A stretch of 64,000 nucleotides of DNA from Macrostomum lignano (taxonomy: Eukaryota): positions 62,001 through 126,000 of the forward strand of contig NIVC01000633.1 in NCBI GenBank assembly GCA_002269645.1, in the 5' to 3' direction. Within the stretch, counting starts at the first letter, position 1. Each line of letters starts with the position of its first letter. Shown here one piece after another: positions 831-63,893 of this stretch. A program made the position numbers and the translations under genes. Under the pieces are notes generated by a model that was given only the letters and a program-made list of their open reading frames with translations, did no database searches and was not told the DNA's origin.

Positions 831-857
831 GTCTGTAACTCCCCCTGCCGCCCGCAG

Positions 858-2990: not shown

Positions 2991-3654
2991 CCAAATTTCT
3001 CTATTTCAAACGATAGCTACACCCTTGAATTCCGAGCAACTACTATAAGTAGGGAAAAAATTCTTATCAGTGCTTTTGACAAATCCAGTGACTTCTGCCT
3101 GCTATATCCGAGTACCAATGCTTAGTGTACATTGGGAGCCTTAATGCAACTGTTAAGAGTATGCTATAAAAGTACTTGTCGGTTCCCTCGCGGCTGTTCA
3201 CCTCACACATTACAATAATTTTCATGCTGGCTTGCCTTGCGTGTTTGTAGCCAGATTCGATTCACCATATACTACTGCTGCTTAACGGTTTGCAGTTCCG
3301 TGCATGCAGGTATTTATTTCCTAATGTAGGCCTTACTGTTAGAGTTTTACTCGCTTGCGGTATCATTCTGTATGGAATTCTTTTTGTGTAAGCTAAATTT
3401 GTTAATTGCTTTTAATTTGAGCACACTTGTCCGTATTTAGAAGTCCTTGAATGCAGCTAAGAGTAATAAATGCTCATTGCTCTGGCATGCCTTTTTCTGC
3501 TCTGCTGGGTCGGCTGCGCTACTCTGTCTAGCAAAAGTAAATGAAAGTAAAACGGCATGCAAACTAATGCCGTTTTACTTGTGCTACAGTAAATAAATGC
3601 AACGCTTTTTAATGTAGGAAGCGTGTTAACCTTATATATAGCGCATGCAGCGGA

Positions 3655-4120
3655 ATGTACACCCTGACACCCTGTGTACATACAGTAGAGTGTACACCCT
3701 GTGTACATACAGTAGAGTGTACACCCTGTGTACATACAGTAGAGTGTACATCCTGTGTACATACAGTAGAGTGTACACCCTGTGTACATACAGTAGAGTG
3801 TACACCCTGTGTACATACAGTAGAGTGCACACCCTGTGTACATACAGTAGAGTGTACACCCTGTGTACATACAGTAGAGTGTACACCCTGTGTACATACA
3901 GTAGAGTGTACACCCTGTGTACATACAGTAGAGTATACACCCTGTGTACATACAGTAGAGTGTACACCCTGTGTACATACAGTAGAGTGTACACCCTGTG
4001 TACATACAGTAGAGTGTACATCCTGTGTACATACAGTAGAGTATACACCCTGTGTACATACAGTAGAGTATACACCCTGTGTACATACAGTAGAATGTAC
4101 ACACTGTACATACAGCGGAT
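3655..4120. repeat. 27-bp minisatellite CCCTGTGTACATACAGTAGAGTGTACA
   Basis: About 17 near-identical units. Confidence 0.95.
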
Positions 4121-4224
4121 TGTACATCCTATGTATTGTACTCGTATATACAGTGGAAATTTCAGTCCATATCTAGTTCACACAGCAGAGTGTACACTCT
4201 ATGTACGTGCATCAGATTGTACAG

Positions 4225-4827
4225 CCGCTGGAGTGCGGTTGTAGTCAGCCAGTATCCGCATGGTTTTACCCGCCTCTCCGACCTGTATCGCGCGCCTCCC
4301 CATCAAACCTCTACTAACCAACCCGCTCGCCACTCTGCGCCCCAGCCGCCGGTCTCAAAGCCGCAGCAACCGCGGCAGCAGCAGCAGCAGCTGGACTTTG
4401 ACTACTCGGCGCCGGTGTCGGACGCCACGGTGTCGGAGTCGCAGCCGACGCCCCTGCCAGACGGCGTGGTGCGCAGCGGCGCCCCGACCCCGCCGACGAG
4501 CTGCCGCCGGCCAACGCCGCCCGCTCGGCGCTGCAGCTGTGGCGCGGCAAAGAGGAGGAGGTGGACGCGTCGGGCGCACCGAATCCCGAGACTGCCGAGC
4601 GGCGCCAGCGCGAGCTGCGGGACGGCGCCAGGCAGCAGCGCCAGGCGGCGGCAAACCGCAATGTCCGCCTGCCACAGCGCCAGGAGCCGCAACGCGGCGA
4701 CGGCGATGACGAGGGCGACGGCGAGATCGTCGGCGAAGGCGTAGCCGACGAGCTGCCTGCCGAGGGGACGGCCAGGAGCCTCCGTTCGCTGTTCGACGGC
4801 TGCCAGCAGCAGCAGCAGGCGGCCTGA
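4225..4827 (+). CDS. Terminal exon of the same repeat-motif protein family, with a 1-nt frameshift in a C-run at 4482-4485 (sequencing error or pseudogene)
   Basis: Acceptor tgtacag|CCG. Frame 1 gives ...LDFDYSAPVSDATVSESQPTPLPDGVVRSG; adding one C joins it to the frame giving PDPADELPPANAARSALQLWRGKEEEVDASG...ELPAEGTARSLRSLFDGCQQQQQAA*. Confidence 0.55.
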
Positions 4828-5689
4828 CCGGTTGACCCCGCGGGACCCCTGCACCCTGAACTCTGCTCAAAGTGACACCAGCGACAGGACTGCGGCATCC
4901 CTCCCGAATACTGATGTACATTTAAGGCTATCCGCTATACGCTATACGCTATCAACGCCATTGCATGCCTGCCTACTCATTTCCGTCTCGCCGATAATCC
5001 AGTAGCATGTTGTGCGCATATTTTTAATTTTTTAATCAGTTGAAATTTTTAATGTCTTTTTACGAGCTAGCTGCCGATGGTTAATATTAATATTTTATCA
5101 ATACTGCATGTTCTGCACTTACTACTCGCGCTCTTATTGCATACACAGTAGCGAGAATTGCGCGCAGCTGCTGCTTTTTTTGTCTGCATGAACTTTTTAT
5201 ATTGTGTTAAACGAAAAATCTTTGAAAATTTTCCTGGTTTCACTTCCCGCCAATTCCGAGGCAAAATTTACGATGTTTTATGCTTCTTTTAATTATACGC
5301 GATTTCGCTTCCGTTTTCAATTAAAAAATTATTATTATTCTCGTTTCGCTTTTGTGCCCGCAGTTGCGTCATTTCTGCCGCCACTGCTGCTGCAACTTCA
5401 AACTGTACAATAGCAATACTTGCGCAAGTATTGACTGTGCTCTGTGTGCGCTGCAATTCAAGTCTGCGCTGCTTTGTGTTGCGCTCCCTTCTCGCACTTC
5501 TCTTGGCTCTTTTTTAATTAGTTTGTCCGCTAAGCAATAAACGCATTGATGCTCTGAGGAGGTCGCCGATTGAGACCGCTTTGTGCATTCAGTAATTTCT
5601 GTGCGGCTTCTGCGGTCTTCTTTTACTAGCATTGCACAGTGCTGCCAAGTATAAGAACACTTCTGCAGTATGTTCTGTGGTCTTTTTGG

Positions 5690-6984
5690 GGTTGCGGGTT
5701 TTGGGGTGTGTTTTGGGGTGTGTTTTGGGGTTGGTGTTTTGGGGTTTGTGTTTTGGGGTTGTGTATTTTGGGGTTTGTGTTTTGTGGTTGTGTTTTGGGG
5801 TTGTGTGTTTTGGGGTTGTGTATTTTGGGGTTTCTGTTTTGTGGTTGTGTTTTGGGGTTGTGTATTTTGGGGTTGTGTGTTTTGGGGTTGTGTATTTTGG
5901 GGTTTCTGTTTTGTGGTTGTGTTTTGGGGTTGTGTATTTTGGGGTTGTGTGTTTTGGGGTTGTGTATTTTGGGGTTTCTGTTTTGTGGTTGTGTTTTGGG
6001 GTTGCGTGTTTTGGGGTTGCGTTTCTTGGGGTTGCGTGTTTTGGGGTTGCGTGTTTTGGGGTTGCGTGTTTTGGGGTTGTGTGTTTTGGGGTTGCGTGTT
6101 TTGGGGTTGTGTTTTGGGGTTGTGTATTTTGGGGTTGTGTGTTTTGGGGTTGTGTTTTGGGGTTGTGTATTTTGGGGTTTCTGTTTTGTGGTTGTGTTTT
6201 GGGGTGGTTATGTATTTTGGGGTTGTGTGTTTTGGGGTTGTGTATTTTGGGGTTTCTGTTTTGTGGTTGTGTTTTGGGGTTGCGTGTTTTGGGGTTGTGT
6301 GTTTTGGGGTTGTGTATTTTGGGGTTTCTGTTTTGTGGTTGTGTTTTGGGGTTGTGTATTTTGGGGTTGTGTGTTTTAGGGTTGTGTATTTTGGGGTTTC
6401 TGTTTTGTGGTTGTGTTTTGGGGTTGCGTGTTTTGGGGTTGCGTTTCTTGGGGTTGCGTGTTTTGGGGTTGCGTGTTTTGGGGTTGCGTTTCTTGGGGTT
6501 GCGTGTTTTGGGGTTGCGTGTTTTGGGGTTGGTGTTTTGGGGTTGCGTGCTTTGGGGTTGCGTGTTTTAAGGTTATGTGTTTTGGGGTTGCGTGTTTTGT
6601 GGTTGGTGTTTTAAGGTTGTGTGTTTTAGGGGTTGTGTGTTTTGGGGTTGGTGTTTTAAGGTTGTGTGTTTTGGGGTTGCGTGTTTTGGGGTTGGTGTTT
6701 TGGGGTTGGTGTTTTAAGTTTGTGTGTTTTGGGGTTGGTGTTTTGGGGTTGCGTGTTTTGGGGTTGCATGTTTTAAGGTTGTGTGTTTTGGGGTTTGTGT
6801 TTTGGGGTTGGTGTTTTAAGGTTGTGTGTTTTGGGGTTGGTGTTTTGGGGTTGCGTGTTTTTGGGTTGGTGTTTTGGGGTTGCGTGTTTTGGGGTTGCGT
6901 GTTTTGGGGTTGGTGTTTTAAGGTTGTGTGTTTTGGGGTTGCGTGTTTTGGGGTTGCGTGTTTTAAGGTTGGTGTTTTGGGGTC
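5690..6984. repeat. G/T-rich ~15-bp minisatellite with a TTTTGGGG core
   Basis: Dozens of TTTTGGGGTTGTGTG-like units. Confidence 0.95.
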
Positions 6985-7640
6985 TGATGATCATAGAGCT
7001 GCATTGACACTAGCCTGATGGTCATAGAGCTGCATTCACACTAGCCTGATGGTCATAGAGCTGCATTCACACTAGCCTGATGGTCATAGAGCTGCATTCA
7101 CACTAGCCTGATGGTCATATAGAGCTGCATTCACACTATCCTGATGGTCATAGAGCTGCATTGACACTAGCCTGATGGTCATAGAGCTGCATTGACACTA
7201 GCCTGATGGTCATATAGAGCTGCATTCACACTAGCCTGATGGTCATAGAGCTGCATTCACACTAGCCTGATGGTGATAGAGCTGCATTCACACTAGCCTG
7301 ATGGTGATAGAGCTGCATTCACACTAGCCTGATGGTGATAGAGCTGCATTCACACTAGCCTGATGGTGATAGAGCTGCATTCACACTAGCCTGATGGTCA
7401 TAGAGCTGCATTGACACTATCCTGATGGTCATAGAGCTGCATTGACACTAGCCTGATGGTCATAGAGCTGCATTCACACTAGCCTGATGGTGATAGAGCT
7501 GCATTCACACTAGCCTGATGGTCATAGAGCTGCATTGACACTAGCCTAATGGTCATAGAGCTGCATTGACACTAGCCTGATGGTGATAGAGCTGCATTCA
7601 CACTAGCCTGATGGTCATATAGAGCTGCATTCACACTAGC
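6985..7640. repeat. 31-bp minisatellite TGATGGTCATAGAGCTGCATTCACACTAGCC
   Basis: About 21 tandem units. Confidence 0.95.
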
Positions 7641-8011: not shown

Positions 8012-11000
8012 TCAGTCTCCGAGCTGCTGCCGGCCCTGCACCGCAGCGAGAGCGGCAGCGGCCAGCAGCAGCAGCGACTCGGACAGTCCGCAGGCCACAG
8101 GCGCGACTCCGCTGGCCTGATCGGACTGGAACCCGACCGGGATTTCGTTGGCCTGCAGGCTGTTGCACAGCTGGCCCACGCAGATCAGGCAGCCCGACAC
8201 GAACTGCAGAGTCCGGCAGTCAAATTTGCCGCAGCCTCCCATCAGGCTGACTTTGTTTGGGGTGTCCTGCGGGGTTCAGGAAGATTTGGGGTGTTCTGCG
8301 GGGTTCAGGAAGATTTGGGGTGTCTTGCGGGTTTCAGGAAGATTTGGGGTGTCCTGCGGGGTTCAGGAAGATTTGGGGTGTTCTGCGGGGTTCAGGGAGA
8401 TTTGGGGTGTTCTGCGGGGTTCAGGAAGATTTGGGGTGTCCTGCGGGTTTCAGGAAGATTTGGGGATGTCCCTCAGGTCTGGAAGATTGTCCCTCAGGTC
8501 TGGAAGATTTGGGGATGTCTCTCAGGTCTGGAAGATTTGGGGATGTCCCTCAGGTCTGGAAGATTTGGGGTGTCCTGCGGGGCTCAGGAGGATTTGGGAT
8601 GTCCTGTGGGGATCAGCATTGGGGATGTCCTGCGGGGATCAGCATTGGGGATGTCCTGTGGGGATCAGCATTGGGGATGTCCTGTGGGGATCAGCATTGG
8701 GGATGTCCTGCGGGGCTCAGGAGGATTTGGGATGTCCTGTGGGGATCAGGATTGGGGATGTCCTGCGGGGATCAGCATTGGGGATGTCCTGTGGGGATCA
8801 GGATTGGGGATGTCCTGCGGGGATCAGGATTGGGGGTGTCCTGCGGGGCTCAGGAGGATTTGGGATGTCCTGCGGGGCTCAGGAGGATTTGGGATGTCCT
8901 GCGGGGCTCAGGAGGATTTGGGATGTCCTGCGGGGATCAGGAGGATTTGGGATGTCCCTTTTAGAGTTCCGAAGTTTCAAGAATGGCTGGGCCGTGCCTC
9001 ACAGAGTAGCCAGTCGCGAAGTTGGGATCCGGTTCAGTGAGCTCAATTCGATGGCAGCTGTTGATGCCGGCACCGCAGTAGGCGGGCTCCTCCTTCACCT
9101 GCGGCACGTACTCCTTCTTGTCGCCATAAAAGATCTGCCTGACATCTCCGCTGTAGCTGTAGCATTGGCTGTGCTTCTGCTCGACTCTCTTCAGCAAGCC
9201 CGTGTTGCACCTGTCTGCACCGCTGCAGACCAGGCAGTTCGACGGGTCCTGCTTGCACTCGTCGCCTTTGGCGCAGTGCGCTTCGTAAACCTGCGGCATA
9301 AGTTAGTTAGTTGGTCAGTTTGCACGGGGATTGGCGCGCATGGATAAATACTCGCACGCACGGACAGCTCACACCGGGTGTTCAGGGGTCCTGACTTTCT
9401 CGTTGCCAGGTATGTACACTCTCTGTGTCTCTGGGGCTGGCATGTACACTCTCTGTGTCTCTGTGGCTGGCATGTACACTCTCTGTGTCTCTGGGGCTGG
9501 CATGTACACTCTCTGTGTCTCTGGGGCTGGCATGTACACTCTCTGTGTCTCTGGGGCTGGCATGTACACTCTCTGTGTCTCTGTGGCTGGCATGTACACT
9601 CTCTGTGTCTCTGGGGCTGGCATGTACACTCTCTGTGTCTCTGTGGCTGGCATGTACACTCTCTGTGTCTCTGTGGCTGGCATGTACACTCTCTGTGTCT
9701 CTGGGGCTGGCATGTACATCTCTGTGTCTCTGGGGCTGGCATGTACACTCTCTGTGTCTCTGTGGCTGGCATGTACACTCTCTGTGTCTCTGGGGCTGGC
9801 ATGTACACTCTCTGTGTCTCTGGGGCTGGCATGTACACTCTCTGTGTCTCTGGGGCTGGCTTTTATGAGCCAGAACTGCGCGAGTCATGAATTCGTCAGC
9901 TAGTTTTTGTTCTAAACGAGACAGGGACCGGAGGGTCAGAAAGGCAGGGACTGGAGGGTCAGAGAGGCAGGGACCGGAGGGTCAGAAAGGCAGGGACCGG
10001 AGGGTCAGAGAGGCAGGGACTGGAGGGTCAGAAAGGCAGGGACCGGAGGGTCAGAGAGGCAGGGACTGGAGGGTCAGAAAGACAGGGACCGGAGGGTCAG
10101 AGAGGCAGGGACTGGAGGGTCAGAGAGGCAGGGACCGGAGGGTCAGAGAGGCAGGGACTGGAGGGTCAGAAAGGCAGGGACCGGAGGGTCAGAGAGGCAG
10201 GGACTGGAGGGTCAGAAAGGCAGGGACCGGAGGGTCAGAGAGGCAGGGACCGGAGAGTCAGAGAGGCAGGGACTGGAGGGTCAGAAAGACAGGGACCGGA
10301 GGGTCAGAGAGGCAGGGACTGGAGGGTCAGAGAGGCAGGGACTAGAGGGTCAGAGAGGCAGGGACTGGAGGGTCAGAGAGGCAGGGACTGGAGTATCAGA
10401 GAGGTAGGGACTGGAGGGTCAGAGAGGCAGGGACTGGAGGGTCAGAAAGGCAGGGACTGGAGGGTCAGAAAGGCAGGGACTGGAGGGTCAGAGAGGTAGG
10501 GACTGGAGGGCCAGAGAGGTAGGGACCGGAGAGTCAGAGAGACAGGGACTGAAGAGTCAGAGAGGTACGGACCGGAGGGTCAGAGAGGCAGGGACTGGAG
10601 GGTCAGAGAGGCAGGGACTGAAAGGTCAGAGAGGCAGGGACTGGAGGGTCAGAGAGGCAGGGACTGGAGGGTCAGAGAGGCAGGGACTGAAAGGTCAGAG
10701 AGGTAGGGACTGGAGGGTCAGAGAGGCAGGGACTGAAAGGTCAGAGAGGTAGGGACTGGAGGGTCAGAGAGGTAGGGACTGGAGGGTCAGAGAGGCAGGG
10801 ACTGAAAGGTCAGAGAGGTAGGGACTGGAGGGTCAGAGAGGTAGGGACTGAAGAGTCAGAGAGGCAGGTGTCCCGCACAGGCGAAGTCGCAGTGCAGCCT
10901 CACGAGAGTCCTCTCGTCGCTGGCCAGCTGGATTCTCTCGAAGCAGCCGGTGTGGAAGGAGGCGCAGGGCTCCGAGTAGTTCTGCTGGCTGAAGTCCACG

Positions 11001-11174
11001 GCAACCAGGCATTCCAAGGACGCTGCTCGGTCTGCAGTTTCGCCAGGTTCAACGAGTACCATGAGTGGTTCGACGAACCTGGAATATTAGAATCGAATCG
11101 AGCTGATAAGGGAGAAACTTACGAGTGGCTGCGGAAAGGATGATCAAACATGCGATAAGCTGATTGAGCTGCAT
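8012..11174 (-). CDS. Secreted, GPI-anchored protein with two Ly6/uPAR (three-finger-like) domains, ~240 aa
   Basis: Exons 11174-11123, 11031-10904, 9290-9003 and 8266-8012 total 723 nt in frame. Signal peptide MQLNQLIACLIILSAAT; domain ends CLVCSGADRCN and CLICVGQLCN; hydrophobic C-terminal GPI-type tail SESLLLLAAAALAAV. Confidence 0.8.
8255..8958. repeat. 28-29-bp minisatellite GATTTGGGGTGTCCTGCGGGGTTCAGGAA in Ly6 intron 3
   Basis: Tandem units; the array edge overlaps the exon-4 acceptor. Confidence 0.95.
9412..9860. repeat. 30-bp minisatellite ATGTACACTCTCTGTGTCTCTGGGGCTGGC (Ly6 intron 2)
   Basis: About 15 units. Confidence 0.95.
9920..10865. repeat. 23-bp purine-rich minisatellite AGGGACTGGAGGGTCAGAGAGGC (Ly6 intron 2)
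   Basis: About 40 units. Confidence 0.95.
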
Positions 11175-11369
11175 CGCTGAGTTCACCACACCGTTCAGCT
11201 TCCAATCGAATTGTTTATTTCGAGTTTAGAGCGCTCTTACTTATTAAAATGCCGTGTGCAGCTACTCAAAACGGTCTGGTCTGTGTTGGCTGTCTACATT
11301 TTTCTGCGCCGCGTACGAAATGTCTATGGGTCAGGCCTAGCTGGTTAATTAGTAAACCTATTTGGTTAC

Positions 11370-11748
11370 CGGATGAGGCTGACCTCTGGTTACTGAGTGA
11401 GGCTGACCTCTGGTTGCTGGATGAGGCTGACCTCTGGTTACTGGATGAGGCTGACCTCTGGTTACTGGATGAGGCTGACCTCTGGTTACTGGATGAGGCT
11501 GACCTCTGGTTACTGGGTGAGGCTGACCTCTGGTTACTGGATGAGGCTGACCTCTGCTGGTTACTGAATGAGGCTGACCTCTGGTTACCGGATGAGGCTG
11601 ACCTCTGGTTACTGGATGAGGCTGACCTCTGGTTACTGGATGAGGCTGACCTCTGGTTACTGGATGAGGCTGACCTCTGGTTACTGGATGAGGCTGACCT
11701 CTGGTTACTGGATGAGGCTGACCTCTGGTTACTGGATGAGGCTGACCT
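11370..11748. repeat. 24-bp minisatellite GGATGAGGCTGACCTCTGGTTACT
   Basis: About 15 units. Confidence 0.95.
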
Positions 11749-12095
11749 CCCCTTGCTGGGGGTATGTCCACCAATTAGCATCTTACATTTTCTACGAAGT
11801 ACATTACAAACTGCATGTGTTTGTAGGATGGCGGCAAGGCCCTCAAAATTCCCTCGAAAGGCCCTCGAATGAGATTTTGACTGGCAACTTCTGTCAACAC
11901 TGCAGAGTAGCCTAGCGGCTCACCGCAAATACACGAATTCAAGGCACATCCAGATATTTATTGAACCACTCATATGTAAATTAGCAAGCCCTTTCTTTTT
12001 CAGGTGTGTCAATTCAGACACATACAATGGATGAGCGCCTACAGAAAAGAGATAATAAATTTCCCGATGAAAAAGTACATTCACTGCTAGATAGA

Positions 12096-13947: not shown

Positions 13948-16900
13948 ATGAGCGCAGCAGCTCAGACGCCGAGCGGCAACGCTGTCGTTGCCGACTCCTC
14001 ACGCAGAGACAGGGATCCGCGCCAGTTCGTGGCCAGCTTCCTGGACTACACCACCGCGCACGGACTCGGCCGCTTCGCTCACCAGTCCAGCCTGCTGGGC
14101 AGGATGATCTGGCTGACCTTCCTGCTCGGCACCTACAGCGGCTTCGTCTACCACCTGTACACCCTGTTCGGCAGGTTCCTCACCGCTCCGGTGCTCACCA
14201 CCATGACAATGTCCACGCTGTCGTACGAGTTCCCGGATGTGTACATCTGTCCCGCACAAGCCGTCACACTGAGCAGGGCCATTGAGCAGATGCCGATAGG
14301 CCTAATCAACTGGAGAGAGAATGACAGGACAGTCCCGATCGATTTCAAAATACACTTCTATGAGTTCGACTTGGAGTCTCGGAACTACGCTGCGCAGAAC
14401 AAGCCGGCGCAAGCTCTGATGAATGTGCTGCAGAGTGCCGAGAGCTCGCTCATGGCCGAGCTGCAGTTCCCCAAGAGCAGTGAGCTCCTAATATATCTGC
14501 ATCTAAAAGTTCATCTTTCTCAGTATTTTATGAGTAGTTCACTGAGTCCCACTGTGCAACGAACTTCTCAGGCAGAGTGGAGTGCAGGACCACGCTCTCC
14601 GGTGAGGAGTACTCGGGCAACGCCAGTGTTGCGGTTGTCTACGACCGGACGAAGATGCGAGTCACGGCTTCGAACATTTCTGGCGTGCTGCCGCCATTCA
14701 GGACGTACAGGCAGTGCATGCAATGGAACGATGCGGCTCAGAGGCTGAGAAGTGTGAACACCAGTTTAACACACAGCCTCGCTGACCGACTGCTGGCGCT
14801 GAACTTCTCCGACAGCGAGTCTCGCTGTCGCTCCCCGCCAGGGCTCCCGCTGTCCGAGTTTTTCCCCATCGCGAATCGTGAGTCAAGAGATTGGTTTCGC
14901 AAGCTTTATTCAGCTTTATTCGACATTCCAACCGAACCTGGAATTACAGGCCCCATGCTGCGGCTTGTTGGTTGCTTTGAGGCGAACTTCACCGACCATG
15001 AATTCAACTACACCTGCGACACGGAAGGCATTGTGACTCACGAGACCTGCGCTCACTGTTGCGCTTCGCTCGACTTCAGCCACATCGCGCTGCAAGTTGA
15101 CAGCTGCCTGTGCGGAGCGAGTCCCCCAAGCTCCGGCAATGACAGCGGCGTCTGCAGCAGTCGCTGCGCCAGCAACGATCAGCAGCACTGCGGGTCAGCA
15201 TCCGCCATCACGGTGCTGCAGATCGGAGACACAGGTGAGTCTCTTGAATTCTCATCAGCAGAAGCCTCTATAACTCTAGCCGAGGCTCAATCCGCTTGCA
15301 GAGCCGAGGCCGCTGCAGGTGGGAAACTTCAGCAACCTCACAGTCTTCTCGCACGGGCCCTACTGCTTCTTCACTGATGAGCGAGACAGGCTGGGCGCTG
15401 CGTTCTGCGATGTGCCTTTCTGCCGTGAGTGAGTTTGCCATACCGAGGATTACCTCCTCAGTTACACCGCACCAATGCTACACTTTTGCAGCGATGTCAG
15501 GTGCTTACGACTGCATCGTGAGCTCTGAGAACAAGACCCTTGAGCGGCTGACTCGGGCCCGGTACACCGGTAGGAAGAACTACACAATCACTGGGAAGCC
15601 GTGCGTGCCGTGGAGCAAGCTGGAGAAGATACAAGAGGATACGTACATAAGAATGGGTAACTATGCGACCGCTGCATGCACAGAATGCCATAAAATGCCC
15701 GAGTTCGAATTCATATCCATGACTTGCAAACGCCGACTACTCACAGGTTATAATTACCACAAGCAGTTCGGATTTCACATTCAGACTCCGGATTTCAATC
15801 CCAACAGCAGCGACAATTTCTGCCGATCGGCACAGATCGTTATCGACCACGGGTCGTACTTTAGTTCGCACGAGGCTTCGTAAGAAAATCTTCCTATCGA
15901 ATTCTTTCTTTGACTTCTGCTGCATAAAACTTTAAAGATGTTTAACTCAACCTCTGCTTCTAACTCGTATTTATAAAAAATAATTTCAGTCGCTTCGCAC
16001 AAGAAATGTCTGATGTGCCGGGCTGCATTCCGGACATCATGGGCTGGGGCGGTCTGTTTGATGCTGACTTCGAGCCCTGCGAGATCCCGCTGTGTTGTAA
16101 GTCGCTTTTTCAGGGCCTTTAGAGCCCTCTTTGTTGAACAAACGATTGATAGGAAATTCGCATTACAAAATTTCTTCCCTAATCCAGCATTCACATAACA
16201 TTTAACAGATGCCGCGGTCCCCAGCGTGACGGGCGCCGTCAGAGACTCAGTCGGCAGCCACCTGCTGGCCCGACAGTTCGGCAGCGACCTCAACGCCGGC
16301 CTCGCCGAGTGCAGCTTTGCTGGCCAGAAGTGCACCAAGGACGACTTTGTGAACGTCGCCCACCCGCAGCTGGGCATGTGCCACAAGTTTCTCAAGCAGC
16401 GCTTCACCGCCAACATGACCAGCACGCAGTTGGCGGAGAGCCAGCTGTCCATCAAGTACTTCACGGACTCGACAGACTCCAAGGGTCAGACGGTGTCCAA
16501 CATCAACAAGCTGACGCGGGTGGTGCGAGACAGCCACGGCTCCGATGCGACTCAGGTCGCATTCAAGGTGAGTCTTCGTCGGTCGCTGAGCGTCTCAGTG
16601 TCTCACGCAATCTCTGAGCTTGGCTGCTCAACCGCGAACCCGCAGGCGGTCATCGTCCCGGATAGCTCGTTCCCGTGGGCCTCGAAGGGAATCGATGTGG
16701 CCACCGCTCAGCGCATGGACGTGCAGCTGAGGTTCGACAAGTATTCCAGACTGTCAACTACATCAAGGCCCTGCCTTGAGACTACGGAGCCGATCACCTA
16801 CCGACTGCCGTCCTGGAAGTCAGCTCCATTTAATGAGAACCCGGAGTGAGTCTTGATGCAGAAACATTTTATCGCCGTGAAGACTGCGCACTGACTGATC

Positions 16901-18242
16901 AATGATTCCCTTTACAGCGACAGTTTCGACTTAAATGCGGTTGCCATGGTGACTGATTGGTGGCTGAAAGTTGCCGCAATGGAAGTGCAGCTTCGGAAGC
17001 AGAAGCAAGGTGCATTGAGGTATGGACCATAGGCTTTAGCTTGTGCGAGTGTGACTGCCAGGTTTGCAAAAGTTGCACGCATTTCCTAAATTTGCAGTTC
17101 GCTGTCGGAATTCGACTTAGAATTCAAGCTGACTGACCGAGACGACTGCATCAACACACACGTTGTGAAGAAGTTCATCGCGGAATGCCACTGCCTGCCG
17201 TCGTTCCTGCCGATTCCGGTGGAGTACTTTTCGAATTACACCTACTGTTTTGCTTTTCAAGCCGCTGGAAACGTTTCCATGGAAACGGACATGTGCTACA
17301 GAAAGCAGAAGTCGAAGGTGCTGGAGTACCAGTTTGCTGCGGTCCGGCTGTGCCAGTCTCCCTGCCGTACAGCCGAGTACAGCGTCCGCCACATCACCTA
17401 TCCGTGGCCGAACCTGAACGGTCTGCAGTCGTTCTCGTTTCTGAAAGCCCTGGCCACCGCGTTTGGATACGGCAGCAACCCCAGCGGCCTGAGGGGCCTG
17501 AACAGCATCTACAGCATCTACCTGAGATCCCTGAGGGATTCGGCAATTCCTGTCAGCAATCGGAGCGCGACAGAAATCCTGAGCTTTCAAAACGAGCTGA
17601 CGGTGCTGCAGAACCGACTGGCTCAGCTGACGGTCCAGGCCTGGACGTCATTCGGCCAGGAGATCTTGGAGGAGGAGGCCTACCCGGCCAAGAACCTCGT
17701 GGCCGACATTGGAGGTGACAATGAGCAGATTCTGTACTCAGTGACCCTTGAGATGACAATGAGCAGATTGTGTACTCAGTGACCCTTGAGGTGACAATGA
17801 GCAGATTCTGTACTCAGTGACCCTGGAGGCGACAATGAGCAGATTGTGTACTCAGTGACCCTTGAGATGACAATGAGCAGATTGTGTACTCAGTGACCCT
17901 GGATCCCAAGTCTCTCAGGAATGTCAGCTTTCGCATCTCATGCCTAAAATTGCAGGTACCTTGGGTCTTTGGTCGGGAATTTCCATTCTGACCGTTTGCG
18001 AGCTGCTCGAGCTGCTCATCTACATCGGCCTGGCCATCGGCTACAAATTCCACAGAGTCGCTGCGCCCCGCAACCGGAACAATGGCGGCCCTGGAGCCAA
18101 CAACAACTTCAACAACAATTGCACCAATACCGGCAGTGTCACAACCGTGGCCGCATCTGTTGCTGGGTGCTCGGAGATGACACAGTCGGCTGTGAGTCAG
18201 GATTCTGTTCAGGTTGAGTTGGAGTCCAATTCCAGGATGTAA
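13948..18242 (+). CDS. DEG/ENaC/ASIC-superfamily channel subunit (paralog 1) with a kringle[WSC]-kringle insertion, ~1037 aa
   Basis: 11 exons (13948-14479, 14572-14877, 14950-15234, 15302-15424, 15492-15656, 15747-15879, 15990-16096, 16209-16567, 16646-16845, 17098-17714, 17956-18242) total 3114 nt in frame. TTAHG pre-TM1 motif, TM1, FPDVYIC, CSFAGQKC...GMCHKF, Cys-rich thumb, and LVADIGGTLGLWSGISILTVCE TM2. Confidence 0.92.
16940..16953. promoter_or_regulatory. Candidate RFX X-box GTTGCCATGGTGAC in DEG/ENaC-1 intron 8
   Basis: Matches GTNRCC-N(0-3)-RGYAAC with one mismatch; adjacent reverse CCAAT (CTGATTGG). Confidence 0.4.
17715..17900. repeat. 38-bp minisatellite starting exactly at the donor of the last DEG/ENaC-1 intron
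   Basis: Five units of GTGACAATGAGCAGATTCTGTACTCAGTGACCCTTGAG. Confidence 0.95.
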
Positions 18243-18794
18243 CGCGAAGTTGTGAATGTGGTTTGAGAATTGATGCCGGAAACTAGTCCAAGAAGTCTGA
18301 GAAGTACAGGTCCAAGCCCATGAACATCTATTGACATCTGTTGGCCTTGCTGTGCTTGGGAGCTCCTATCTACTAAAGAATTATATAAGCAAATTTTAAA
18401 GAATGTTTTTTAATTACAAGTATGTTTCACTCGCTTCAGTTTAAATCTTTAATAACAAACCTAACGATGTACGAGTATGTTTGGTAAGACATTTTGATGT
18501 TAGTCCTCTTCATCTGTTTGTCAGATCAGAAATAGTTTTCACTGAAACCTTTTTCTTTTGCTTACCTGTTTTTTTCCCTTCCTCTTACAAAACTTGACCT
18601 TTTAAATTCTTATTGTCACTCCTGAATAAATTTGTTTTAATTTAGACGTGCCTGTAGACACTTTTCCACCGATGGCTGCACTTTCTCGGCATCTAACTCA
18701 GAGAAGCGTTGAACTTTTTAACCCTGAAAAAGTTACTGAAACTTTATCATGAATACCAAGATAGACTTTAATACGCAATACAACAGCTGCTAGT

Positions 18795-19163
<369 letters not shown>

Positions 19164-21083: not shown

Positions 21084-21245
21084 ACCGCTGTGTTCGGCTG
21101 TGGAGACTGGCACAGCCGGACCCCAGCAAACTGGCACTCCAGCACCACCTTCAACTGTTGCTATCTTTAGCACATGTCCGTTTCCATGGACACGTTTCCA
21201 CCAGCTTGAGAATCAAAACAGTGAAGGTGTCAATGAACTATTTAT
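21084..21245 (-). pseudogene. Decayed inverted fragment of DEG/ENaC-1 exon 10
   Basis: The reverse complement aligns to ~17225-17385 (GGAAACGT.TCCATGGAAACGGACATGTGCTA; GGTCCGGCTGTGCCAGTCTCC) with in-frame stops (TAC->TAA, AAG->TAG) and indels. Confidence 0.85.
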
Positions 21246-32089: not shown

Positions 32090-35000
32090 TCAGACTTGAG
32101 CATTATTATGCCTTACTGCGTCCGTATCGAGCGCGACCATCTCTGACTCCGGCCTGGCCGACTCTTCGGGCTGACCGTCGGCGTTTTTTGACTGCATCCG
32201 GGACTGCGCCTGCACTCTGGCAGCCAGCGCCTGTCCCAGGTAGATGAAGAGCTCCAGCAGCTCGCAGATAGTTAGGATTGAGATGCCGGACCAGAGACCC
32301 AGAGCTCCTGAAATTCATTTTGTATTAACGGTTTTTCAATACTGAAAGACTTGTTGAGCATGATCAACCTGGACCACTTACCCCCGATGTCGGCCACCAG
32401 GTTCTTGGCTGGGTAGGCCTCCTCCTCTGAGACTTCGTGGCCGCGGGACTGCCAGGCCTGGACCGTCAGCTGAGCCAGGCGGTTCTGCAACGCCGCCAGC
32501 TCGCTTTCGAAGCTCTGAATTGCCTCGGTGCTCCGGTTGATGACGGGAGTGTCAGAGAGGTTCTGAGCCTTAAGGTAAAGGTAGTAGATGCTTGAGGCGC
32601 CTCTCATCAAGCTGATATCGTGTCGATAGCCAAAGTCGGCGGCCAACTTCTTCAGAAAGTCGAGAGACTGCACCGAGAGCAAGTTCGGCCACGGGTAGGT
32701 GATGTAGCGGGTGCTGAAGTCGGTCTTGCTGCAGGGCGACTTGCATTCGTTCATGGCTTCAAAATGGTACTGCGTGATCTTCGACACCTGCTCAATGTAG
32801 CACTTCTCAGTGTTGGCCGAAATGTTTCCCCTTGAGTACATGTCGAAGCAGTAGCTGAGCTTTTTGAACCGCTCTTCTTGAATGGGAAGCATCCCCGGCA
32901 GGCATCGGCAGGTGTTGGTGAATTTTTCGACAACATAAGTGTTGACGCAGTTCTCTCTGTCCGAGACTTTGAACTGACTACCCGAGACTGTCAGTGCGCT
33001 GAAGTCATGGAGATTATTGCGAAATTCGATTTGACATGCTGAAATTCCCAGAAGCAGAGAAGCGCAAAAAAGGAGGGTTTTATGCAAAATCTTACCTTGA
33101 GCCGTTCAGTTTAAGCAGCGCGTTGCGAAACATAGACAGCTTCAGCGTCCAGTTGGAACATCGCATAATTTCCTGCGCGTCCGAGTTGACGCTGGAAGCA
33201 AATTTTTAGTTTTAAACAGCTTTGATATTTACAATATTGCAGACTAAATATAAGGAAATAAAACTTTTTGCTTTCTTTACCCAGAGTCCTCATTTGACGT
33301 AAACAGCTTCCATGACGGCAGTCGGTAGGTGATTGGCTCCGTAGTCTCAAGGCAAGGCCTCGATGAGGTGGACAGTCTGGAGTACTTGTCGAATCTAAGA
33401 TGCACGTCCATGCGCTGAGCGGTGGCCACATTGACGCCCTTTGAGGCCCACGGGAACGAGCTATCCGGGACGATGACCGCCTGCGGGTTCGCGGTTGAGC
33501 AGCCAAGCTCAGAGATTGCGTGAGACACTGAGACGCTCAGCGACCGACGAAGACTCACCTTGAATGCGACCTGAGTCGCATCGGAGCCGTGGCTGTCTCG
33601 CACCACCCGCGTCAGCTTGTCGATGTTGGACACCGTCTGACCCTTGGAGTCTGTCGAGTCCGTGAAGTACTTGATGGACAGCTGGCTCTCCGCCAACTGC
33701 GTGCTGGTCATGTTGGCGGTGAAGCGCTGCTTGAGAAACTTGTGGCACATGCCCAGCTGCGGGTGGGCGACGTTCACAAAGTCGTCCTTGGTGCACTTCT
33801 GGCCAGCGAAGCTGCAGTCGGCGAGGCCGGCGTTGAGGTCGCTGCCGAACTGTCGGGCCAGCAGGTGGTCACCGACGGAGTCTCTGATTGTGGCTGTCAC
33901 GCTGGGGACCTCGGTGTCTAAAGAAATTCATTCGGTACAGAATGCTCTGAAAACAATGCCTAGAATATAATAATAAATAATAACTGAGAAACAGATCCAG
34001 CTCAATGGTCACTGGCACAACTCACAACAGAGTGGCACGTTACAGGTCTGAAAGATCATGTTAAACAGGTAGCCAAATTTTATCGTAATGGACGGAATGT
34101 TGACCCAGAAATCTTCCGGTATGCACACAGGAACCTCCGAATCGATGGCGCTAAACCGCCTAAAACAATAGGAAAGATTTTGGAGCGCTGCAACAAGCAC
34201 ACATACGCTACTTGCGATGCAATAGAAGCTTACTGGAAATCCTTGGGCCCGTGGATGTTGACAGAATCGACCACAACGCTAACCGGACGGCAGTAATTGT
34301 CGCTCTCGCCTTCAAGCCTGTCCGGAGTCTGGATAAGCATTTCCCGCACTTCGTCCATGAAGCCAACTTCCGAACCTAAATTGGAATTTGACTGGTTCGG
34401 TCAGGCGAAATTAAATTTGCCAGCGGCACAGGTGAGCAATGCAATCGAAGCTCTTACCGCGGCGCGCCTTGAGAACTTGCTCAATTGTGGACAGCTGACT
34501 CCAGGGCATGCACCGCCGGCCAGTGCTGGTGACGTTCCGCCGTCCGGTGTAGCGCGACAGCCTTTGCTGCTGAGTCAGCTTGTCCTCGGAGCTCACGATG
34601 CAGTCGTAGTTTCTCGAAATTTCTGGATTGAGCGATGGAACGTCAAGTATTTCATTCACGAATCGAAGTCGTCTTTGAAAGGAAAAGTCAGGCAACATGT
34701 TGGAAACTCACGGCAGTAGGGAATTTCGCAGAATGCAGCGTTCAGCTTGTCGCTCAGCTCATCCGCGAAAAAGCAGTAGGGCCCGCTGGAGATTGCGTCC
34801 AGGTCGCTGAAGTTCGCGACGTGCAACGGCCTGCTGCCTACAAAGTGGAATGCGTGCCTTGAGCTGCGAGTTACGAGTCTGCAGAATGACCTGATTTTGC
34901 CAGCAATATACAAGTGACCATAAAAATCTGTCCCAGCTCGTCAACTTATCGGTTTTATTGAGCTACTTTTGAGTAGCAACCAATCTCTAACCCGCTCTCC

Positions 35001-36294
35001 GACTATCCCACCTACCGTTGTCCCGAATCTGCAGAACAGTGACGGCAGTTTCCGATCCACAGATTGCCGAATTGTCGTGGAGGCAGGAGGCGTTGCACAC
35101 GCTGCTGCTGTTCTCGTAGCCGCCAATGCTGCTCCCGCAGAAGCAGTCCTGGCGGCTGATCGCCATGTACTGGAAGCTGCGCCTGCCGCAGCATTCAGCG
35201 CAGGTTTCGAGCGAGCTCAAGCCGCCCCGGTAGCAGGTGAAGTTGAACGAACTCGAGTTGGTCAGCGCAAGGGGAAGGCAGCCGGCGTGCCGAAACACCG
35301 AGCCTGTGGTGTTGGCAGGACCGGAAATCTCCATCCGTGTGACCTGATCGAGACAAACAAATCGGACAAACAGATGGAAACTCACGGCTAGCGATAGGAA
35401 AGAACTCAGACAGAGGCAGCCCAGGCGGCGAGCGGCACCGGGACTCGCTGTCTGAAAAGTTCAGCGCCAGCAGTCTGTTAGCCAGGCCACTTTCGCCGAG
35501 GCTCAGCAGTTTTTGAGCTGCATCGTTCCACCTCATGCACTGCTTGACGCCTCTGTACGGACTGGGCGTGAACGCCGAAGTGTTGATGGACGTCACAGTC
35601 ATAGTGGTGAATCCGTAGACAACTGCTGAGCTCACATTCCCGGAGTACTCTTCTCCAGAGGGCGTTCTTCGACACTTGGCTGCGTCGGCTGAAGAAATGA
35701 AATTGCGTTTTAGGATTGGGTTCATGGCAATGGTTTGAAGAGCAACTCGTCCAGACTGCACAGTGCGCGCTGTCTTCACAGCAGTCAGGAGGACTCACCG
35801 ATATCGAAAAACTGAAAGTAAGACATTATGATCTCCTCCATGCTGTGCAGAACGCTCAGCAAAGCCTTCGTCATGTCGTTCAGCTCCAAATCGTACCGTC
35901 CGCTGGAGAGATCAAACGAGTAAATTCCGATTTTTTCCTCGACGCTTTTCTTTAAGAAAAACTCGCCAAAGGTGACGTCGTTTTGGGGCAGCTTTTTAAA
36001 AATCCTGCTCATGGTAACGGCGTTAGTTGGGCAGATGTACACATCCGGGAACTCGAACTGTAGAGTGGACACGGTCATTTTAGTGAGCACCGGAGCCTGC
36101 AGAAACCTCTCGAACAGGGTGGACAGGTGGTAGGCAAAGCCGCTGTAGGTGGCGAGCAGGAAGGAGACCCAGATCACCCTGCCGATGAGGTTGGACTGCT
36201 CGGAGAAGCGGCCCAGCCCGTGGGCGGTGGTGTAGCCGCAGAACCGCTTCACGGGCGAGCTGAGTCCTTCCGGTGCGTCAGAGCTGCTGCCCAT
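32090..36294 (-). CDS. DEG/ENaC/ASIC-superfamily channel subunit (paralog 2) with a kringle[WSC]-kringle insertion, ~1015 aa
   Basis: 11 exons (36294-35799, 35688-35386, 35303-35016, 34837-34712, 34622-34458, 34375-34234, 34159-34026, 33917-33559, 33480-33281, 32998-32382, 32307-32090) total 3048 nt in frame. Intron positions and phases are the same as paralog 1. TTAHG, FPDVYICP and LVADIGGALGLWSGISILTICE are present. Confidence 0.92.
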
Positions 36295-40086: not shown

Positions 40087-40119
40087 TGCGGCTGCAGCCA
40101 GGTGGCGGGGATGAGGGTT

Positions 40120-57030: not shown

Positions 57031-63893
<6,863 letters not shown>

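What the first reader, a model, noticed from the sequence alone, without database searches (positions are those of the whole stretch)
14572..15424. WSC domain nested inside a kringle, on its own symmetric phase 1-1 exon
Seen: kringle 1 Cys1-3 (VEC, RQC.QW, SRCRSP) are in exon 14572-14877 and Cys4-6 (GPYCF...FCDVPFC) are in exon 15302-15424. Between them is a 285-nt exon encoding a whole WSC domain (VGCF...TCAHCC...CLCG...CSSRC...CGS...TVLQI). All flanking introns are phase 1. Paralog 2 has the same layout (303/288/126 nt). Skipping the WSC exon would restore a continuous in-frame kringle, and skipping the whole 1119-nt insert also keeps frame. Established: phase 1-1 exons are the classic signature of exon shuffling in extracellular modules. 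Inference: a domain-in-domain insertion into the loop after CRxP, and possibly an alternatively spliced switch.
Basis: partly seen in the sequence, partly recalled or inferred. Interest (0 to 1): 0.85.

Follow-up and report, generated by a model that had tools for sequence, protein, structure and literature searches.

The report
WSC domain nested inside a kringle
In a flatworm (Macrostomum lignano) sodium-channel gene, one small disulfide-knotted module (a kringle) is split in two by a whole second module (a WSC domain) carried on its own exon. This is a clean, apparently undescribed case of exon shuffling placing one domain inside another, on the outer face of an ion channel.

Summary
Exons 14572-14877, 14950-15234 and 15302-15424 are GT-AG bounded, have lengths divisible by three, and are all flanked by phase-1 introns. 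The middle exon encodes a complete Pfam WSC domain. The outer two exons encode Cys1-3 and Cys4-6 of a divergent kringle. Pfam misses this kringle, but a profile-profile comparison of the two halves joined matches the full length of 122 canonical kringles (98% probability, E 2e-13). Each half alone also matches its proper part of the kringle.

The same exon layout occurs in paralog g2 in this window and in three more distant M. lignano paralogs whose GenBank models come from RNA-seq. An AlphaFold model of g2 is confident (pLDDT 82, pTM 0.77), and its WSC part superposes on yeast Wsc1. I could not check the disulfide geometry.

The host gene is a DEG/ENaC channel. The cassette kringle1(WSC)-kringle2 sits in its extracellular domain, probably the finger. 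It was found only in M. lignano among 1.8 billion representative proteins.

The proposed splicing switch has no support: none of 13 database models that contain both halves skips the WSC exon. Function is inferred to be a ligand- or matrix-binding module that tunes gating. I rate it a new variant of known kinds, of moderate interest.

The parts
13948..18242 (+). Gene g1, a DEG/ENaC channel. My model has 12 exons and 1071 aa: 13948-14479, 14572-14877, 14950-15234, 15302-15424, 15492-15656, 15747-15879, 15990-16096, 16209-16567, 16646-16845, 16918-17019, 17098-17714, 17956-18242.
   Evidence: All junctions are GT-AG and the reading frame is open. Pfam ASC E 3.5e-36. The HG motif (TAHGLGRF) and the TM2 motif GLWSGIS are present. 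The 78-nt intron 16568-16645 is inferred from the transcript-based model of the g2 twin.
14572..14877 (+). g1 exon 2: N-half of kringle 1 (aa 178-279), with Cys1 (VEC), GEEYSG, Cys2 (QCMQWN) and Cys3 (SRCRSPPG). Phase 1-1.
   Evidence: Kringle HMM positions 1-17 and 21-57 match in order, 13.1 bits against a shuffle maximum of 6.7. hhalign gives 93.6% probability to kringle positions 1-61.
14950..15234 (+). g1 exon 3: complete WSC domain (aa 280-374) with 10 Cys. Phase 1-1.
   Evidence: Pfam WSC E 4.4e-8, profile 2-81 of 82. The g2 counterpart, in the AF2 model, superposes on Wsc1 (7pz2, TM 0.71) and matches Kremen1.
15302..15424 (+). g1 exon 4: C-half of kringle 1 (aa 375-415), with a return linker (RPLQV...) followed by Cys4 (GPYCFF), Cys5 and Cys6 (AAFCDVPFC). 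Phase 1-1.
   Evidence: Kringle HMM positions 57-83, 18.3 bits against a shuffle maximum of 7.9. hhalign 96.1%. Multi-kringle proteins match this part together with the next exon at E down to 2e-21 in 1.84e9 proteins.
15492..16096 (+). g1 exons 5-7 (15492-15656, 15747-15879, 15990-16096): kringle 2 (aa 416-550). It is uninterrupted by another domain but has a Cys3-Cys4 loop of about 30 residues. The internal introns are phase 1 and phase 2.
   Evidence: Pfam Kringle reaches only E 0.008. All 40 PDB profile hits are kringle proteins. Custom HMM 31 bits, hhalign 97.8%. UniProt names fragments that begin at this domain 'Kringle domain-containing'.
32090..36294 (-). Gene g2, a paralog about 50% identical to g1 in the cassette. 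Cassette exons: 35688-35386 (kringle 1 N-half, 303 nt), 35303-35016 (WSC, 288 nt), 34837-34712 (kringle 1 C-half, 126 nt). Kringle 2 exons: 34622-34458, 34375-34234, 34159-34026.
   Evidence: It is 98.5% identical, across every junction of the cassette, to GenBank PAA48513.1, which is a transcript-based model. This gene supplied the AF2 target.

Best explanation
g1 and g2 belong to a Macrostomum lignano subfamily of DEG/ENaC sodium channels. Their extracellular domain carries a grafted cassette of about 370 residues: kringle 1, with a WSC domain nested in it, followed by kringle 2.

Shown:
- The WSC domain lies on its own class 1-1 exon, between the exon for Cys1-3 and the exon for Cys4-6 of kringle 1.
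- The whole cassette is itself bounded by phase-1 introns.

Inferred, on how it arose: exon shuffling put a WSC exon into an intron within the Cys3-Cys4 loop of a kringle, and put the cassette into the channel gene.

Inferred, on how it folds:
- All three kringle disulfides (1-6, 2-4, 3-5) join an N-half Cys to a C-half Cys. The two halves therefore have to fold together around the insert.
- The first and last strands of a WSC are neighbours in its sheet, so it can sit in a loop.
- The Cys1-Cys6 bond brings each kringle's ends together, so the tandem cassette can sit in a loop of the channel.

Inferred, on function: the cassette projects from the finger domain at the outer upper corner of the trimer. 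There it acts as a built-in binding module for a glycan, matrix or protein partner, or as a mechanical tether, that modulates gating.
For: Architecture:
- Exon borders and phases.
- WSC passes the Pfam threshold.
- The joined halves match a full kringle: hhalign 98.0%, E 2.4e-13, template positions 1-83. Each half alone matches its proper part.
- HMM scores are far above 3000 shuffles.
- MAFFT, unsupervised, places the six Cys of 96 kringles on g2 C9, C54, C88 / C222, C237, C242, with the WSC as one gap.
- All 10 tested multi-kringle hits that match the C-half plus the kringle 2 N-half are Pfam kringle proteins.
- All six kringle 1 Cys are conserved in every paralog that has the region.

Layout across paralogs:
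- Exons of 303/300/123, 297/312/123 and 297/276/123 nt, all phase 1, in three further paralogs with RNA-seq-based models (PMC5730564).
- The g2 junctions are identical to those of PAA48513.1.

Fold:
- AF2 gives pLDDT 81.7 and pTM 0.77. That pTM is too high unless the N-half, the WSC and the C-half form one rigid unit.
- The WSC part matches Wsc1 (TM 0.71) and Kremen1.
- WSC strand order is beta1-beta5-beta3-beta4-beta2, and the kringle disulfide pattern is as in Kremen1 (PMC5014086).

Host and location:
- Pfam ASC. The closest solved relatives are FaNaC channels.
- The insertion point lies between segments that align to FaNaC1 residues 84 and 168. That span holds the finger helices, alpha1 F97 and alpha2 F129.
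- There are 12 N-glycosylation sequons in the 373-aa cassette.
Against: - Pfam does not call either kringle at its gathering score. The best hit is 16.9 bits against 34.3, and only for the kringle 2 N-half.
- Kringle 1 has non-canonical loops: 23 extra residues before Cys2, and two confidently predicted helices between Cys2 and Cys3.
- The AF2 alignment contained canonical kringles, so the model leans toward a kringle.
- No coordinates were available, so no disulfide was verified. Foldseek gave no kringle-only hit.
- The first AF2 run, with a shallow alignment, failed.
- The mapping to the finger domain rests on weak alignments in that region.
- Nothing here tests binding, gating or expression.
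- No donor gene for the cassette was found.
Confidence: 0.72

Rival explanations
1. The WSC exon is a cassette exon. Cells switch between a channel with kringle 1 plus WSC and one with a plain kringle 1 by skipping exon 3.
For: Exon 3 is 285 nt and phase 1-1, so skipping keeps the reading frame. Some older UniProt models of paralogs do differ in exon content in this region, but they drop exon 4, not exon 3 (P0003, P0004, P0006).
Against: None of 13 database models with both kringle halves lacks the WSC. RNA-seq-derived GenBank models of four paralog loci all include it. Both linkers between kringle and WSC are conserved (GLPL..F and PL.[VI]) and are modelled with confidence, which suggests an obligate unit. 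Symmetric phase is a general property of shuffled modules and is not evidence of regulated skipping.
Confidence: 0.1
2. The flanking Cys-rich segments are not two halves of one kringle. They would be lineage-specific extensions of the WSC, or remnants of two different kringles (kringle-WSC-kringle with internal losses), that merely retain kringle-like motifs and do not form the canonical fold.
For: Pfam finds no kringle in kringle 1. Loop lengths are non-canonical and helices are predicted between Cys2 and Cys3. The disulfides are unverified. A hybrid origin from two kringles cannot be told apart from an insertion using present data.
Against: The halves match complementary, non-overlapping, collinear parts of the kringle profile (positions 1-61 and 61-83). 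There are exactly three Cys on each side, conserved in all paralogs, and none of the three kringle bonds can form within a single half. pTM 0.77 points to a single compact unit.
Confidence: 0.12
3. Gene-model artefact: the three exons belong to different transcripts, or the introns are mis-called, so that no single protein has the nested arrangement.
For: I could obtain no transcript data for g1 itself. One UniProt model of g1 (A0A1I8IV52) reads through the 72-nt in-frame intron 14878-14949. My own first model missed a 78-nt intron inside 'exon 8'.
Against: The GenBank RNA-seq-based model PAA48513.1, which has three copies in the assembly, reproduces all cassette junctions of g2 residue for residue. 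Three more paralogs have the same exon layout in transcript-based models. The corresponding intron in g2 is 82 nt and cannot be read through in frame.
Confidence: 0.03

Closest known systems
Kremen1/2 ectodomain (kringle-WSC-CUB)
   Same: It pairs the same two domain types, kringle and WSC, in one extracellular unit. In Kremen1 the two pack tightly and together bind DKK1 (PMC5014086). The Kremen1 structures 5fws, 5fwu, 5fwv and 5fwt are among the best Foldseek matches of the model.
   Different: In Kremen the domains are in series (kringle, then WSC), not nested. Kremen also has a CUB domain and a single-pass anchor. Here there is no CUB, a second kringle follows, and the host is a two-TM ion channel. 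The superposition has an rmsd of 14-17 A, so the relative arrangement differs.
DEG/ENaC channels with elaborated finger domains (FaNaC, ENaC, C. elegans degenerins)
   Same: The channel core matches: Pfam ASC, HG motif, GxS-type TM2. FaNaC is the closest solved relative. In this superfamily the finger is the variable, gating-relevant corner: it holds the peptide site in FaNaC and the protease and ion sites in ENaC, and it is a proposed matrix-tether site in mechanosensitive members (PMC11026163).
   Different: Known finger elaborations are family-specific helices and loops, not recognisable mobile modules. I found no report of a DEG/ENaC channel carrying kringle or WSC domains. Three M. lignano channels tested by Dandamudi et al. 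(Mlig049925.g2, Mlig051885.g1, Mlig041003.g1) gave no peptide response (PMC9234716). I could not tell whether they belong to this subfamily.
Class 1-1 exon-shuffled extracellular modules (Patthy)
   Same: The WSC exon, both kringle half-exons and the whole cassette are bounded by phase-1 introns. This is the signature described for shuffled metazoan modules (PMC8001218).
   Different: Shuffled modules are normally strung in series between other modules. Here one module is placed inside another, and each half of the recipient module sits on its own 1-1 exon.
Known nested extracellular domains (laminin L4 inside an LE module; integrin beta I-like inside hybrid inside PSI). Recalled from general knowledge, not tested here.
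   Same: A globular domain is inserted between the cysteines of a small disulfide-rich module, so that the host module's disulfides bridge the insert.
   Different: The domain types and the host protein differ. No kringle with a nested domain is known to me or was found in the literature searches.

Membership tests
Kringle (Pfam PF00051) | Scores above the Pfam gathering threshold (34.3 bits) | tested here: not met
   Kringle 1 with the WSC removed gives no hit. Kringle 2 gives 15.6-16.9 bits, E 0.008-0.02, for its N-half only.
Kringle (Pfam PF00051) | Six conserved Cys with the flanking motifs in canonical order (C..G..Y.G, C..W, CR.P, PWC-like, C.[IV]P.C) | tested here: met
   g1 has VEC/GEEYSG, QCMQWN, SRCRSPPG, GPYCFF and FCDVPFC. 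These are conserved in all paralogs. MAFFT aligns them with the Cys, Y, G, W and R of 96 kringles.
Kringle (Pfam PF00051) | Significant profile-level homology over the full domain length | tested here: met
   hhalign against 122 kringles: kringle 1 minus WSC 98.0%, E 2.4e-13, template 1-83; kringle 2 97.8%, E 1.1e-12. HMM scores are above all 3000 shuffles. All PDB hits are kringles.
Kringle (Pfam PF00051) | Disulfides 1-6, 2-4 and 3-5 and the kringle fold | not testable with these tools
   The AF2 model is confident (pLDDT 81.7, pTM 0.77), but coordinates are not returned. Foldseek cannot bridge the 130-residue insert.
Kringle (Pfam PF00051) | Compact domain of about 80 residues with about 11 residues between Cys3 and Cys4 | tested here: not met
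   Kringle 1 has about 133 residues between Cys3 and Cys4, or about 38 without the WSC. Kringle 2 has about 30. Kringle 1 also has 23 extra residues before Cys2.
WSC (Pfam PF01822) | Scores above the Pfam gathering threshold (27.8 bits) over the whole profile | tested here: met
   The exon 3 translation scores 33.7 bits, E 4.4e-8, profile 2-81 of 82. Scored within the full-length protein it drops to 27.0 bits.
WSC (Pfam PF01822) | WSC/PAN-like fold | tested here: met
   The g2 model against Wsc1 7pz2: E 1.5e-5, TM 0.71 normalised to the target, rmsd 2.6-3.6 A. Kremen1 and the glyoxal oxidase WSC are also hit.
WSC (Pfam PF01822) | Eight conserved Cys (four disulfides) | tested here: met
   There are ten Cys in the exon: the canonical eight positions plus a conserved extra pair (TC and the second C of CC). 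Paralogs P0007/P0153 have lost two.
DEG/ENaC (Pfam PF00858, ASC) | Pfam match, two TM segments, HG motif before TM1, G/SxS motif in TM2 | tested here: met
   ASC E 3.5e-36. TAHGLGRF, IWLTFLLGTYSGF... and GLWSGISILT are present. FaNaC, ASIC and PPK are the PDB hits.
Kremen family | Serial kringle-WSC-CUB ectodomain on a single-pass membrane protein | tested here: not met
   There is no CUB, the order is nested rather than serial, and the host is a two-TM channel.
Class 1-1 shuffled module | Domain boundaries coincide with phase-1 introns on both sides | tested here: met
   g1 and g2. P0009, P0161 and P0153 loci.

The most novel reading that the evidence does not exclude
The cassette kringle1(WSC)-kringle2 is a built-in extracellular receptor or tether on a DEG/ENaC channel. 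Binding of a matrix glycan or protein, or force transmitted through it, to the nested kringle-WSC unit on the finger domain would gate the channel directly. That would make this a self-contained mechanosensitive or ligand-gated channel, in which the accessory matrix-binding function that is separate in other systems has been fused into the pore-forming subunit by exon shuffling.
Probability: 0.25. Interest if true: 0.8.

Novelty: new variant of a known kind. Interest (0 to 1): 0.55.

Why it matters
There are three reasons.

1. It is a clear natural example of exon shuffling placing a folded module inside the disulfide framework of another small module, rather than only stringing modules in series. 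The exon structure still records the event.

2. It shows that standard domain annotation misses such cases. These proteins are labelled only 'WSC domain-containing', and the split kringle is invisible to Pfam.

3. It gives a DEG/ENaC channel recognisable binding modules on its gating-relevant outer corner. How extracellular partners or tethers gate this superfamily is an open question. A channel with a built-in kringle/WSC module in a transgenic, RNAi-tractable flatworm would make that question directly testable.

Tried and rejected
- Pfam on kringle 1 with the WSC removed gave no hit.
- Single-sequence and 3-4-sequence profile searches of PDB gave only E 0.01-3, although every hit was a kringle.
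- hhalign of kringle 1 against kringle 2, using 3-4 sequences each, found nothing useful.
- The first AF2 run, with a 6-row alignment, failed at pLDDT 33.
I therefore used the database twin of g2 (P0001) as the target.
- Adding kringle halves and WSC domains as separate alignment rows misaligned the N-halves. Whole kringles without WSC rows aligned correctly.
- Foldseek gave no kringle-only match.
- Contig look-ups for P0002 and P0003 found nothing.
- I looked for nested kringle-WSC arrangements outside M. lignano among hits whose match ran from the WSC into the C-half region (P0011, P0124, P0145, P0090). All were spurious extensions without the Cys.
- I looked for a donor of the kringles. The closest are ostracod (Darwinula) multi-kringle proteins and unnamed metagenome proteins, so no donor was identified.
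- I considered whether the kringle 2 intron after Cys3 is homologous to the kringle 1 introns that flank the WSC. The phase (2 against 1) and the position differ, so I make no such claim.
- I rejected a bacterial or viral reading of the window. It has spliced eukaryotic genes with GT-AG introns of 70-240 nt.
Full report
**1. What is at the coordinates**

The window is spliced eukaryotic DNA. The best database matches are all Macrostomum lignano.

- 14572-14877, 306 nt
- 14950-15234, 285 nt
- 15302-15424, 123 nt

All three are read in the frame that leaves one base of a split codon in the upstream exon, which is phase 1.

Their translation runs as follows:
- Exon 2: ...VEC RTTLSGEEYSG ... YRQCMQWND ... 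SESRCRSPPGLPLSEFFPIAN
- Exon 3: a 95-residue segment with ten Cys
- Exon 4: RPLQVGNFSNLTVFSHGPYCFFTDERDRLGAAFCDVPFC

A second copy, g2, lies on the minus strand with exons of 303, 288 and 126 nt: 35688-35386, 35303-35016 and 34837-34712. All its introns there are also phase 1. The descriptive part of the finding is therefore correct.

**2. The gene**

Extending the model in both directions gives a 12-exon gene, g1 (13948-18242, + strand). Its product is a DEG/ENaC channel:
- Pfam ASC at E 3.5e-36
- HG motif before TM1
- GLWSGIS motif in TM2

Exons 2-7 total 1119 nt (aa 178-550) and form an insert in the extracellular domain: kringle 1 N-half / WSC / kringle 1 C-half / kringle 2. The insert as a whole is also bounded by phase-1 introns.

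g2 (36294-32090, - strand) has the same structure.

A GenBank protein from the RNA-seq-based annotation of assembly NIVC01 is 98.5% identical to my g2 model. This is PAA48513.1, present in three near-identical copies. It is identical across every junction of the cassette (annotation method in PMC5730564). The same comparison showed that I had missed a 78-nt phase-0 intron inside 'exon 8' (g1 16568-16645; g2 33558-33481). It also showed that the last exon of g2 is probably different from my model.

**3. Is the middle exon a WSC domain?**

Yes.
- The exon translation alone passes Pfam's threshold: 33.7 bits against 27.8, E 4.4e-8, profile positions 2-81 of 82.
- In the AlphaFold model of the g2 segment, this part superposes on the yeast Wsc1 sensor domain (7pz2: E 1.5e-5, TM 0.71 normalised to the target, rmsd 2.6-3.6 A).
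- It also matches the Kremen1 structures and a glyoxal oxidase WSC.

**4. Are the flanking exons two halves of one kringle?**

Pfam says no at its threshold. Kringle 1 with the WSC removed gives no hit, and kringle 2 gives only 16.9 bits for its N-half. I therefore tested the idea in other ways.

(a) PDB searches.
- Single sequences and small profiles returned only kringle proteins, in the correct register, but at weak E-values: 3 of 3 and 4 of 4 hits for kringle 1, 40 of 40 for the kringle 2 profile.
- The single kringle 2 sequence gave 7 kringle proteins among 11 hits.

(b) A profile of the whole insert searched against 1.84 billion representative proteins.
- After the family itself, it found multi-kringle proteins at E 2e-21 to 1e-10.
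- These match profile positions 203-272 repeatedly. That span is the kringle 1 C-half plus the kringle 2 N-half, which is exactly what tandem kringles should do.
- All ten that I checked are Pfam kringle proteins, E 1e-46 to 1e-117.

(c) A kringle HMM that I built from those hits, using the 124 sequences a six-Cys pattern picked out (two turned out not to be kringles and were dropped before the hhalign test).
- The joined g1 halves score 26.8 bits, against a maximum of 9.6 in 3000 shuffles.
- One alignment runs from Cys2 to Cys6 straight across the exon 2/exon 4 junction.
- The N-half alone scores 13.1 against 6.7, with HMM positions 1-17 and 21-57 in order.
- The C-half alone scores 18.3 against 7.9, at HMM positions 57-83.

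(d) Profile-profile comparison with hhalign.

| Query | Probability | E-value | Kringle positions matched |
|---|---|---|---|
| Joined halves | 98.0% | 2.4e-13 | 1-83 |
| N-half alone | 93.6% | 2.2e-7 | 1-61 |
| C-half alone | 96.1% | 2.9e-9 | 61-83 |
| Kringle 2 | 97.8% | 1.1e-12 | 7-83 |

(e) MAFFT, given the family and 96 canonical kringles with no guidance, aligned the kringle Cys, Y, G, W and R on g2 residues C9, Y18, G20, C54, W57, C88, R89 / C222, C237, C242. It treated the WSC as a single long insertion.

(f) UniProt itself names N-terminally truncated models that begin at kringle 2 'Kringle domain-containing protein'.

The sequence evidence for a split, divergent kringle is strong.

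**5. Structure**

The first AlphaFold run, with a 6-row alignment, was useless (pLDDT 33).

With the alignment, the model of the g2 kringle1+WSC segment (245 aa) has mean pLDDT 81.7 and pTM 0.77. Low confidence is limited to residues 1-3, to 31-46 (the family-specific loop before Cys2) and to 211-213.

The WSC makes up only about 40% of the chain, so a pTM of 0.77 requires the N-half, the WSC and the C-half to be placed confidently relative to one another. In other words, the model is one compact unit.

Caveats:
- The alignment contained canonical kringles, which biases the model towards a kringle.
- Coordinates are not returned, so I could not measure the Cys-Cys distances.
- Foldseek aligns sequentially. 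It found WSC-containing structures and no isolated kringle.
- The model puts two helices between Cys2 and Cys3, which canonical kringles lack.

The result is compatible with one kringle but does not prove it.

An argument from established kringle chemistry helps here. All three kringle disulfides (1-6, 2-4, 3-5; Kremen1 C32-C114, C55-C95, C84-C109 in PMC5014086) link one of the first three Cys to one of the last three. Neither half can satisfy its cysteines alone. All six are conserved in every paralog that covers the region.

The WSC sheet order beta1-beta5-beta3-beta4-beta2 (same paper) makes its first and last strands neighbours. This fits a domain that enters and leaves through one loop. 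That last step is my inference.

**6. Distribution and conservation of the layout**

Whole-cassette matches occur only in M. lignano proteins. They represent at least eight paralog lineages:
- g1 / P0005
- g2 / P0001 / P0169
- P0002 / P0004
- P0003 / P0006
- P0007 / P0153
- P0009 / P0157
- P0010 / P0161
- P0012, P0018 and P0171

A search with the channel part alone again found only M. lignano proteins as close relatives, and all of them carry the cassette or are fragments that begin inside it.

I fetched the loci of three distant paralogs with RNA-seq-based models and mapped their exons:

| Paralog (locus) | Kringle 1 N-half | WSC | Kringle 1 C-half | Intron phases |
|---|---|---|---|---|
| P0009 (L001) | 303 nt | 300 nt | 123 nt | all 1 |
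| P0161 (L002) | 297 nt | 312 nt | 123 nt | all 1 |
| P0153 (L003) | 297 nt | 276 nt | 123 nt | all 1 |

The nested exon layout therefore predates the family's diversification.

The linkers are conserved on both sides of the WSC: GLPL..F after Cys3 and PL.[VI] before Cys4.

No hit outside the family has a WSC inside a kringle. The few alignments that ran from the WSC into the C-half region were spurious.

**7. Alternative splicing**

Skipping exon 3 would keep the frame, but I found no sign of it.
- All 13 database models with both the Cys3 and Cys4 motifs have 118-153 residues between them.
- These include the transcript-based GenBank models.
- Three older UniProt models (P0003, P0004, P0006) skip exon 4 rather than exon 3, and P0002 has a short exon 4. 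I cannot tell whether those are isoforms or annotation errors.
- I had no RNA-seq reads, so the switch is unsupported rather than excluded.

**8. Where the cassette sits and what it may do**

The closest solved channels are the FMRFamide-gated FaNaCs, followed by ASIC5 and ASIC1.
- The g1 segment before the insert aligns to FaNaC1 residues 6-84.
- The conserved 'LAECSFAGQKC' segment, about 30 residues after the insert, aligns weakly to FaNaC1 residues 168-198.
- The insertion point therefore falls among the finger helices, alpha1 F97 and alpha2 F129. This mapping is approximate.

The FaNaC structure paper describes this outer corner as gating-relevant across the superfamily. It holds the peptide site in FaNaC and the ion and protease sites in ENaC, and it is a proposed matrix-tether site in mechanosensitive members (PMC11026163).

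What is known of the two domain types:
- Kringles and WSC domains are binding modules.
- In Kremen1 the two together bind DKK1 (PMC5014086).
- In yeast Wsc1 the WSC domain is the sensor head of a cell-wall mechanosensor (7pz2 title; PMC9024836).
- The g1 cassette carries 12 N-glycosylation sequons, as expected for an exposed ectodomain.

My best reading is that the cassette is a built-in ligand- or matrix-binding module, or a tether, that modulates gating. That functional step is inference only.

**9. Comparison with what is known**

The nearest domain-level relative is Kremen, but there the domains are serial and a CUB domain follows.

The nearest channels are FaNaC-like. Dandamudi et al. tested three M. 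lignano channels from a branch next to FaNaCs and saw no peptide response (PMC9234716). I could not link their gene identifiers to this family.

Phase 1-1 modules are the classic shuffling units (PMC8001218). Domains nested in small disulfide modules are known elsewhere, for example laminin L4 inside an LE module and the integrin beta subunit. That is from general knowledge and was not tested here.

Literature searches found no kringle with a nested domain and no DEG/ENaC channel with kringle or WSC domains. The proteins exist in databases only as uncharacterised 'WSC domain-containing protein'.

**10. Verdict**

- The domain-in-domain reading is well supported at sequence level and is compatible with the structure model.
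- The splicing-switch idea is unsupported.

It is a new variant of known kinds: a new architecture, both for a kringle and for a DEG/ENaC channel, so far restricted to one flatworm. Interest is moderate, and would be higher if the cassette proves to gate the channel.

Noticed in passing
window 16209-16845 (+) and 33917-33281 (-): My 'exon 8' of g1 and g2 is 93-95% identical in DNA (blastn 16212-16819 against 33914-33307, 95.4%). Every other exon pair is 52-73% identical. This looks like a gene-conversion tract confined to one part of the channel ectodomain. The identity runs through the 78-nt intron inside it.
   Followed up: partly
window 16568-16645 (+); 33558-33481 (-): There is a 78-nt, in-frame, stop-free intron (GTGAGT...CAG) inside what reads as one long exon. 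GenBank's transcript-based model removes it, while older UniProt models keep it.
   Followed up: partly
window 14878-14949 (+): The intron between the kringle 1 N-half exon and the WSC exon of g1 is 72 nt, in frame and without a stop. UniProt model A0A1I8IV52 reads through it. Retention would add 24 residues to the linker instead of breaking the frame.
   Followed up: partly
window 17715-17955 (+): The last intron of g1 contains about five tandem copies of a unit of about 45 nt. Each copy begins with the donor-site sequence GTGACAATGAGCAGATT, so the splice donor is reiterated.
   Followed up: no
window 21101-21229 (-): An isolated fragment is 70% identical to g1 aa 844-885. It is probably a scrap of a channel pseudogene lying between the two convergent paralogs.
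   Followed up: no
paralog models P0003, P0004, P0006 and P0002 (not in the window): Three UniProt models of other paralogs join the WSC exon directly to the first kringle 2 exon, dropping the kringle 1 C-half. P0002 has a shortened C-half exon. These are either annotation errors or isoforms that would break the kringle.
   Followed up: partly
window 62583-63902 (-): A long open frame encodes a polycystin-type cation channel: Pfam PKD_channel E 7e-81 and Polycystin_dom E 2e-56. It is a second, unrelated channel gene at the edge of the window.
   Followed up: partly
window 39703-40173 (-) and 41253-41855 (-): Exons of housekeeping genes: ribosomal protein L22e (E 5e-49) and a U1-type zinc finger, like U1 snRNP C (E 8e-19).
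   Followed up: partly
window, many places: about 80-3100, 3460-4240, 5370-7015, 8120-11900, 18700-19150, 37800-38950, 41800-43000, 48700-49950, 55400-56200, 57240-59300, 59800-61500, 61900-62540: The window is very rich in minisatellite-like tandem repeats that read as long open frames in several frames at once, for example DRQT, DEADLWLL and PTHQPSNP units. There is an AT-rich block at about 50-54 kb (GC 27-34%) and a GC-rich block at 44-46 kb (GC 67%).
   Followed up: no
hits P0016, P0019, P0025 (not in the window): Unnamed ENA and Logan proteins combine 6-8 kringles with a rhodopsin-type 7TM receptor domain. This is an unusual architecture, seen only in passing.
   Followed up: no
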